This document shows, one piece after another, positions 12,094 through 15,000 of a stretch of DNA of 64,000 nucleotides (positions are counted from its first letter, which is position 1; each line of letters starts with the position of its first letter). A program made the translations under genes and the position numbers. Source of the DNA: Saccostrea cucullata. Taxonomy: Eukaryota. The stretch lies in NCBI RefSeq assembly GCF_032062105.1, contig NW_026941489.1:62001-126000 (forward strand). The letters are read 5' to 3'. A model generated the notes under the pieces. The model ran no database searches. It was not told the DNA's origin and worked only from the letters and a program-made list of their open reading frames with translations.

Positions 12094-15000
12094 ATGGATA
12101 CTAAAGAGATTGCCATCTTCCTTCTATGTGTTAAAAGTATCGCAATCTTCTGTAAAGGTAATGCATGCACTTTTTCTGATGAGTTAATCTTAAAGCGAAT
12201 TATGCAGAAACAACTTTGAATTTATTCAGCACTTATCTACAGTTTATTTATCCATGTTTTCCGAAGGAGCTGGACATGTTGGACTTCCTCCTGTGATAAC
12301 GTCAGAGTTTGAACCGGAATATTTCTTTCCTCCAGTCCACTCTACCTCACTGAGTCTCCACTGCCAGGCGGAAAACGGAAATATCACGTTAAGACTCCAC
12401 TTGGATTATTCCTTTGATAATACAAGAATCTGCGATTATTATAAACACCTTCTAACTTTTGAAACCCCTATATCTTTTCTGCATTCTACTCGTATCATAC
12501 AACATTTGATGTATTTTTAAGGTATGAATGGTATAAAAGTTTTATGAAACTTGAAGATAACCAAACAGTTACCTCTTACTGGAATACAGGGGAAATTTTC
12601 TTCTCAAATCTCACAACTGAGGATTTCGGAATGTATTATTGTCTAGCAAACCAGAAGTCTCTGTCGAGACTGAAGCTCTACTGGTTTGTACTTATAGCAA
12701 AGGAAAAGAAAGGTTCTTAAGCAGTTGGGAACTGAAACTTTACCACAGCAATAAAAAGAATAATGATCCTTGATTAAGTCTCTTTATGTTCTTAGTGTAG
12801 TCTACTTGCATGCCACATTATATTATAATCAGACTTAAACTGTATTTCGAGTAGCATTTTGAGAGTTTTTAACAGAAATTTCTATTTTTAGTAACAATGG
12901 CAACACCGTTCATCGAAATCAAAAATAGAATTATGTATCTTAGTGTAGTGTACTTGTGTGCCAAGTTATATTGAAATCAGACCAAAACTGTAAGAGGAGT
13001 AGCATTTTGAAAGAATTTCACAGAAATTTCTATTTTTAGTAACAACAGCAACACTGTTCATTGAAATCAAAAACGAATAAACAGAATTATGTATCTTAGT
13101 GTAGTGTACTTGTGTGCCAAGTTATATTGAAATCAGACCAAAACTGTAAGAGGAGTAGCATTTTGAAAGAATTTCACAGAAATTTCTATTTTTAGTAACA
13201 ACAGCAACACTGTTCATTGAAATCAAAAACGAATATACAGAATTATGTATCTTAGTGTAGTCTACTTGTGTGCCAAGTTATATTGAAATCGGACCAAAAC
13301 TGTAAGAGAAGTAGCATTTTGAAAGAATTTCACAGAATTTTCTATTTTTAGTTACAACGGCAACACCGTTCATCGAAATCAAAAACCGATATAACGAATT
13401 ATGTATCTTAGTGTAGTCTACATGTGTGCCAAGTTATATTGAAATCAGACTTAAACTGTAGGAGGAGTAGCATTTTGAAAGAATTTCACAGAAATTTCTA
13501 TTTTTAGTAACAACGGCAACACCGTTCATCGAAATCAAAAACCGATAGACAGAAATACATGTATGTATCTTAGTGTAGTGTACTTGTGTACCAAGTTATA
13601 TTGAAATCAGACCAAAACTGTAGGAGGAGTAGCATTTTGAAAGAATTTCACAGAAATTTCTATTTTTAGTAACAACGGCAACACCGTTCATCGAAATCAA
13701 ACACCGATACACAGAAATATGTATCTTAGTGTAGTCTACTTGTGTGCCAAGTTATATTGAAATCAGACCAAAACTGTAGGAGGAGTAGCATTTTGAAAAA
13801 TTGTTTACAGACAGACAGACAGACGGACAGAGAGGACGGACGGACGCATTACTATCGCATAAGCTCTTCTGGTCTCTGACCAGTAGAGCTAAAAATGAGT
13901 TTGGGGCTTCAGTTTCTGCTTTTGTCAAGATATCAGAAACAAGTGAGTGTATCAATTTTCAGTTATTTATATTTTTAAAAAGTCAATATATCCTGAAATA
14001 TCATTAATTGGAAAGATTTAAAAAGTTTACATTTTTTACCTTTTAAATAAAGAAATTTAATTTATTTTCATGGTCTAATAGGTTTGTTTCATGATGTAGG
14101 TATAGATATAACTCGGAAAGAAAAATGTACACTTTTTAAAACTTCTTAAGAATACACCTATACATTTACAGAGTTACGAAATAGAAATCATACTGTAAAT
14201 TAAGATAATTTTATATATATTTTTTACGATCATAATGCTTTTTTTCTTTCTGGTAGGAATTGATTCATTTCCATTTAAGAATGAAAGAAACGAAACATGT
14301 CAAGAATTTCATCACTGCAAACTTTCATGTTCTAACAAACCCATCTGTGTACCAACAAACAACTGTCGAATAGAATGGAAAAATGGGCCTGGAACGTTAA
14401 ATAATGTGGATATAAGTGAAAACATGACGTTAGATAGAGAGGGTAATAAATACTTTGCACTATTGTCAGAAAAAAATTACTCAAACCTTCTGGATCAAAT
14501 CTTCTGAAAGAAAATCCGTTGAAAACCTGTTAAATGTTTTATTGTTAGTTCTCCTTGATTTTCCTTTCTTTCTTATTTCTTTTCTAATTTTCCTTTTATT
14601 TTATAAAATAACGGCCAGGAAACCTTCATTTTCTAAACATCAACCTATCTTACGGAGCAAAAGATTATTACTGTGGTGTTTGGAATGACAACGAACAAAT
14701 ATTTCGGAAGGGAAATTTATTGAATCTTATTGTACAGGGTGAGTTATTAGTGATTTGTATCAGATATGTAATTCAAAACAACAACAGAAATCTGCAAATG
14801 CAGAAGAATTATAATAATTGTTAATATAACAGCAATACCTTTCGAATAAAACTAGTTGTTATACCTTCAAAAATTTGTTCCTATACAAATCTATACGAAA
14901 ACGTCTAACATTTCTAATGTTTTGCTGAGCGGGCATAAAAAATCGATGTTTGACCGCTGAGTGAGATGTTGGACCGCTTACGTCACAAAATGGGCGGAAC

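What the first reader, a model, noticed from the sequence alone, without database searches (positions are those of the whole stretch)
12649..13890. Helentron insertion whose own inverted repeats would create a new in-frame 1200-nt intron
Seen: the element splits exon 3 of receptor 1 between ...YYCLA and KNEFGAS, which is contiguous in paralog 2 (YHCLAKNEFGAS). Read-through stops at TAA 12718-12720, yet the other 11 exons and all splice sites are intact. The left subTIR gives CTG|GTTTGT (GT 12684). The right subTIR gives CTCTTCTGGTCTCTGACCAG| (AG 13883) after a pyrimidine-rich run. Splicing 12684-13883 removes 1200 nt and keeps the frame, giving YYCLA-NQKSLSRLKLYCRA-KNEFGAS, a 14-aa insert that recreates a YC-x-A-K-N-E strand. 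Inference: both splice sites sit in the conserved inverted repeats, so antisense insertions of this family could act as intron-generating (Introner-like) elements. I know that role mainly for TIR DNA transposons, not rolling-circle Helentrons.
Basis: partly seen in the sequence, partly recalled or inferred. Interest (0 to 1): 0.88.

Follow-up and report, generated by a model that had tools for sequence, protein, structure and literature searches.

The report
Young oyster Helentron breaking receptor exon
A recently jumped rolling-circle transposon sits inside a coding exon of an oyster immunoglobulin-type receptor gene; on paper it could be spliced out in frame, but its splice signals are weak and folded away, so it most likely just disables one copy of a redundant gene.

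Summary
Observation confirmed. A 1,242-nt non-autonomous Helentron (HINE; about 1,500 candidate copies, ends 98-100% identical) lies antisense in exon 3 of a 12-exon oyster Ig-domain receptor. Two homologues in this assembly are empty at the site. Removing 12684-13883 keeps the frame and adds 14 aa.

Splicing is not shown, and the evidence leans against it. The acceptor ranks 62-69 of 96 AGs in the element. Both sites are predicted buried in local stems; the 'pyrimidine run' is one arm of the terminal hairpin. Stronger acceptors, donors and two AATAAA lie inside. Only 1 of 96 acceptors and 1 of 3 frames stay open. The insertion is too young for intact exons to count as evidence, and broken copies are common in this family.

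No carrier RNA was found, so the decisive test is open. Helitron introners are already published. The scan noted a similar idea for another element in this genome (s1-701006). Verdict: probable null allele; productive intron about 12%.

The parts
12649..13890 (-). Non-autonomous Helentron (HINE), 1,242 nt net; ends lie in A runs (T runs on its own strand), net +2 A, no target duplication
   Evidence: empty homologues L022/L023; at least 1497 candidates in the genome; ends shared by 32 copies
12656..12671 (-). 3' palindrome (stem-loop) of the element
   Evidence: 6-bp stem
12674..12685 (-). 3' subTIR; holds the proposed donor GT 12684-12685
   Evidence: donor 12681-12689 pairs with 12646-12654, P(unpaired) 0.01
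12718..12720 (+). first in-frame stop on read-through
12750..12755 (+). AATAAA, possible premature poly(A) signal (a second at 13076)
   Evidence: use not tested
12784..13802 (-). central tandem array, 6.6 x 156 nt, 90% matches; each unit carries T-rich AG sites and three carry GTAAGA donors on the gene strand
13807..13846 (-). 4-nt microsatellite (GTCY type on the element strand); AG 13810 is the best-scoring acceptor in the pooled model and is out of frame with donor 12684
   Evidence: -18.1 kcal/mol, z -4.4
13879..13890 (-). 5' subTIR; holds the proposed acceptor AG 13882-13883 and rival AGs at 13886 and 13888
12094..12157 (+). receptor 1 exon 1 (signal-peptide-like)
12267..12387 (+). receptor 1 exon 2; joint to exon 3 seen in run X5
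12522..13942 (+). receptor 1 exon 3 (179 nt when empty), second half of Ig domain 1, split by the element
14257..20815 (+). receptor 1 exons 4-12: further Ig domains, transmembrane exon 20036-20120, acidic tail 20188-20815; open frame
21920..37046 (+). tandem paralog (receptor 2), empty at the site; LINE-type insert in one intron

Best explanation
A young HINE was inserted by an autonomous Helentron into an A-rich Lys-Asn site of exon 3 on one haplotype. Transcripts read into the element and stop at TAA 12718, end at an internal AATAAA, or splice through stronger cryptic sites into frameshifts and are probably degraded. The allele is a null or strong knock-down in a redundant, birth-and-death receptor family. 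The splice dinucleotides are a by-product of the subTIR sequence, kept for transposition. Shown: identity, youth, empty homologues, frames, weak site scores. Inferred: RNA folding in vivo, decay, loss of function.
For: HINE anatomy. Zero differences over 180 terminal nt to three other copies, while homologous exons differ 4-12%. Chance of no second lesion 0.43-0.76 at 0.1-0.3% divergence, a rough model. Acceptor rank 62 and 69 of 96; opening energy 11.8 vs 1.4-9.5 kcal/mol for host acceptors, donor 8.6-9.5 vs 0.7-6.2 (40- and 60-nt windows). Only 1 of 96 AGs is productive with donor 12684; 1 of 120 two-step paths. Broken copies elsewhere: allele on C3376/C15898, receptor-2-like copy with stops, a 1-nt exon 2 deletion in run X1. 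No loose end at 12683 among the best-supported ones in about 2,600x of RNA reads on the element end.
Against: No carrier RNA, so loss of the transcript is not shown. The donor sequence scores within the low end of real donors (3.5 vs 2.8-12.4). The gene was under purifying selection (dN/dS about 0.34). A second exonic copy lies in the same rescuable frame. The splice model rests on only 18-19 sites, and folding is a prediction.
Confidence: 0.75

Rival explanations
1. One reading: the spliceosome uses GT 12684 and AG 13883 often enough to give a full-length receptor with 14 extra aa; the family works as an imprecise, frame-restricted intron generator.
For: Frame is kept; sites conserved across copies; donor has 6 of 9 consensus matches; the second exonic copy L056 has the same orientation and frame and its spliced model is open; helitron introners exist (PMC12130899).
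Against: Weak and buried acceptor; stronger rivals at 13810, 13669 and in every unit; neighbouring AGs 13863, 13886, 13888 all give stops or frameshifts; the rescuable frame is expected in 25-39% of exonic hits anyway; both host genes are redundant paralogs with broken alleles; the insert adds an extra Cys at the F-G turn of an Ig domain (inference from Ig topology).
Confidence: 0.12
2. Partial in-frame rescue by other routes, giving a receptor with a damaged first Ig domain: donor 12713 to exon 4 (+4 aa, last strand replaced), or exon 2 to AG 13814 (-17 aa).
For: Both keep the ORF; AG 13814 scores 3.9-4.1 and the 13810-13814 region is accessible; donor 12713 resembles the real exon 8 donor.
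Against: Donor 12713 scores 2.6, below every sampled host donor; AG 13810 would compete and is out of frame from exon 2; no reads.
Confidence: 0.08
3. Spliceosome-independent SOS splicing, triggered by pairing of the two inverted repeats, removes the element imprecisely and yields some in-frame mRNA.
For: SOS splicing excises ITR-bounded transposons from worm and human mRNA (PMC12779559); the two subTIRs can form a 12-bp duplex of -20.2 kcal/mol.
Against: The repeats are 12 nt against 54 nt for Tc1; in a fold of the whole element each arm pairs with a local partner at P 0.92-1.0, not with the other end; the pathway was not tested in molluscs here.
Confidence: 0.05

Closest known systems
Cg_HINE elements of Crassostrea gigas (PMC7492417) and DINE-1/HINE (PMC4067079)
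   Same: 5' subTIR with internal inverted repeat, 4-nt microsatellite, central satellite-like array, 3' subTIR with palindrome, T-rich target, no duplication, no ORF.
   Different: This subTIR 8-mer was not found in the Cg_HINE supplement text (one file is cut), so the exact family may be undescribed. The paper's main text has no mention of exons.
Introners, including the helitron-derived Suillus family 5 (PMC12130899)
   Same: A non-autonomous mobile element with GT and AG near its ends, lying in a coding exon; the helitron example also hits TT without duplication.
   Different: Introners are families of annotated, spliced introns. Here no splicing is seen, 1 of about 48 sampled loci is clearly exonic, and removal would leave 42 nt and work in one frame only.
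SOS splicing of Tc1/mariner (PMC12779559); imprecise splicing of maize Ds and dSpm (own knowledge)
   Same: A transposon in an exon could be removed at RNA level leaving a small insertion.
   Different: Needs end-to-end ITR pairing or usable sites; here short subTIRs pair locally.

Membership tests
HINE (non-autonomous Helentron) | 11-15 nt subterminal inverted repeats, 5' one next to the end, 3' one some tens of nt inside | tested here: met
   12-nt perfect pair 13879-13890 and 12674-12685; the 3' one is about 25 nt from the end, nearer than the 38-60 nt given for mite HINEs
HINE (non-autonomous Helentron) | internal IR next to the 5' subTIR and palindrome at the 3' end | tested here: met
   13862-13873 and 12656-12671
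HINE (non-autonomous Helentron) | insertion into T-rich site, no target duplication, variable terminal Ts | tested here: met
   empty homologue L022 has six A where the filled site has 3+5; A run of 3-6 at the end of 32 copies
HINE (non-autonomous Helentron) | microsatellite plus central tandem array, no coding capacity, many dispersed copies | tested here: met
HINE (non-autonomous Helentron) | autonomous Rep/Helicase/endonuclease partner with the same ends | not tested
   not searched
Introner | element is removed from mRNA at consistent splice sites | not testable with these tools
   no run holds more than 18% of this haplotype's words; runs laid were empty at the site or did not express the gene
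Introner | many copies form introns in unrelated genes | tested here: inconclusive
   1 clear exonic copy among about 48 loci (83 ends), same frame; the scan is insensitive to short exon remnants
Introner | host coding sequence restored closely enough, whatever the phase | tested here: not met
   42 nt stay; two of three frames contain stops
Introner | splice sites of usable strength | tested here: inconclusive
   donor low but in range; acceptor at or below the weakest host sites and buried; small training set

The most novel reading that the evidence does not exclude
This oyster HINE family carries a working donor and acceptor in its two subTIRs, so antisense insertions at in-frame Lys-Asn sites become new introns that leave a fixed 14-aa peptide. 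The window and L056 would be two polymorphic intron gains by a Helentron in a mollusc.
Probability: 0.12. Interest if true: 0.65.

Novelty: new member of a known kind. Interest (0 to 1): 0.27.

Why it matters
As it stands it is an ordinary but clean case of a very young, heterozygous HINE knocking into a copy-number-variable Ig receptor family in an oyster. If the junction were real, it would be a segregating intron gain caught in the act, by a Helentron, in an animal. The PNAS introner survey's main text names neither Helentrons nor oysters. The fixed 14-aa tag would make the family easy to find in proteomes. Two exonic copies with a one-PCR test each make it cheap to settle.

Tried and rejected
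Carrier search: no indexed run above 18% of words. Read laying was limited to 11950-12783, because the tool turns away long repeats and the element holds a 1-kb array; the joint 12683^13884 itself could therefore not be displayed, only loose ends. The first acceptor matrix had an off-by-one error for 8 sites and was redone; donor scores and frame counts are unaffected. 'Other exons intact' was rejected as evidence of function because the insertion is too young. The recreated Y-C-x-A motif is treated as coincidence: flanks of other copies show no such target similarity. The -1 at the same A run in C3376 could be an excision footprint, but it and the +1 in exon 6 are both in homopolymers and may be assembly errors. 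Pfam found nothing for the L056 gene.

Full report
Observation. The element occupies 12649-13890 on the minus strand. It has a 12-nt perfect subTIR pair, an internal inverted repeat at 13862-13873, a 3' palindrome at 12656-12671, a 4-nt microsatellite and 6.6 copies of a 156-nt unit. This is the anatomy given for oyster Cg_HINE elements (PMC7492417) and for DINE-1/HINE (PMC4067079). The assembly is 1.17 Gb and seems to hold both haplotypes: the neighbouring kinase exon has exactly two copies. A protein from one fetched locus matches Saccostrea echinata at 52%, so the genome is an oyster (inference). The left end has at least 1497 candidate copies, the best 40 at 97-100%. Three copies show no difference over 180 terminal nt, so the insertion is very young.

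Host gene. Twelve exons with GT-AG ends give a 663-aa type I membrane protein once the element is removed: signal peptide, Ig domains, one hydrophobic segment and an acidic tail. Intron 2 is confirmed by a GT..AG joint in run X5. Two homologues in the assembly are empty at the site. C3376 is collinear over 14 kb and is the other haplotype. C15898 holds an extra, intact receptor-1-like copy. Contigs of runs X1 and X5 also leave the stretch at 12650, as empty alleles would. The insertion is therefore heterozygous here and absent from the other animals examined.

The proposed splice. It is less special than it looks, since 44 of 429 GT-AG pairs near the ends keep the frame. It is also fragile. 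With donor 12684 only 1 of 96 AGs is productive, and the neighbours at 13863, 13886 and 13888 all fail. The 42 retained nt are open in one frame only.

Site strength. Against 18-19 host sites from the window, the donor scores at the low end of real donors. The acceptor ranks 69 and 62 of 96 AGs in two models, below 18 of 19 and all 19 host acceptors. The best rival, AG 13810, is out of frame. Every array unit has T-rich acceptors, three have GTAAGA donors, and there are two AATAAA. The training set is small, so these ranks are indicative only.

RNA structure. The whole donor 9-mer pairs with the element end plus host bases. Opening costs 11.8 kcal/mol at the acceptor and 8.6-9.5 at the donor, against 1.4-9.5 and 0.7-6.2 for host sites in 40- and 60-nt windows; one host donor and one host acceptor were as closed in 100-nt windows. 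In a fold of the whole element each subTIR pairs locally, not with the other end, which also argues against SOS splicing (PMC12779559). Donor masking depends on the flank: this copy is the most closed, the median of 32 copies is about 0.23 unpaired. These are predictions.

Reads. No indexed run holds more than 18% of this haplotype's words, so no carrier was available. Two poly(A) runs do not express the gene but cover the element end about 1,500x and 1,150x from other copies. The best-supported loose ends lie at 12647-12649, 12694-12695 and 12711-12712, and most of these also occur in DNA. None is listed at 12683, so it has fewer than about 79 and 73 reads. I left the tandem array out of the call because the tool turns away long repeats, and I did not search or fold the joined model.

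Are intact exons evidence of function? Little. The chance of no second lesion is about 0.76 at 0.1% and 0.43 at 0.3% divergence, on a rough model. The gene was under purifying selection (dN/dS about 0.34 against the C15898 copy), but the family tolerates loss. The allelic copy has indels and a stop in its last exon, the receptor-2-like copy on C15898 has several stops, X1 shows a 1-nt deletion in exon 2, and about a dozen more distant paralogs exist.

Among about 48 loci fetched, one more copy lies in a real coding exon. In L056 it splits the last exon of a gene contiguous in the Saccostrea protein XP_061170611.1, in the same orientation and the same single open frame. The element prefers A runs, and in host coding sequence 25-39% of such targets are in that class, so one extra case has a chance of about 0.3. 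The L056 gene is a paralog: the ortholog is C15408 at 73-85%, many copies carry stops, and the allele on C8195 lacks the element, has stops in two exons and shows no last exon. Both exonic copies thus sit in genes that can be lost.

Comparison and verdict. It is a HINE by every structural test run. It is not an Introner by present evidence: splicing is unshown and phase-independent restoration fails. Rolling-circle introners are not new: helitrons make up about 1% of classified introner families, one inserting at TT without duplication (PMC12130899), though that text names neither Helentrons nor oysters. Best reading: a young null or knock-down allele (0.75). Productive splicing at the proposed sites 0.12, other in-frame routes 0.08, SOS-type removal 0.05. 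Interest 0.27.

Noticed in passing
L056 469-1570 (G000:C1089, about 41526-42627): Second copy of the same HINE splits the last coding exon of an uncharacterised oyster gene (paralog of Saccostrea XP_061170611.1), same orientation and frame as in the window.
   Followed up: partly
L023 / G000:C3376 near 4000: The allelic empty site is one A short (frameshift) with a G>A change exactly at the insertion point; homopolymer error or a footprint.
   Followed up: partly
G000:C3376 and C15898: The other haplotype seems to carry kinase, receptor 1, a broken receptor 2 and an extra receptor-1-like copy: copy-number variation of the tandem array.
   Followed up: partly
window 3429-4451 vs C3376: Allelic coding sequence differs by 7% and introns by 10-20%, high for one species; possibly a hybrid animal or a balanced immune locus.
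   Followed up: no
window about 27400-35200: LINE-type element (endonuclease and reverse transcriptase pieces, with stops) in an intron of receptor 2, itself interrupted by a GC-richer insert at about 29600-33500.
   Followed up: no
window about 970-8415: Upstream gene with a tyrosine-kinase-like Pfam match (PF07714) and a second kinase-like region further down.
   Followed up: no
32 HINE copies: The flank after the 5' end is mostly five A then T, suggesting a preferred target ATTT^TT on the element strand rather than any TT.
   Followed up: partly
G000:C13106 332000-433000: Cluster of at least eight more distant paralogs of this Ig receptor.
   Followed up: no
L010/L019 and L011/L017: Two non-coding insertion sites of this family occur on two contigs each, with different array lengths in one pair.
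   Followed up: no
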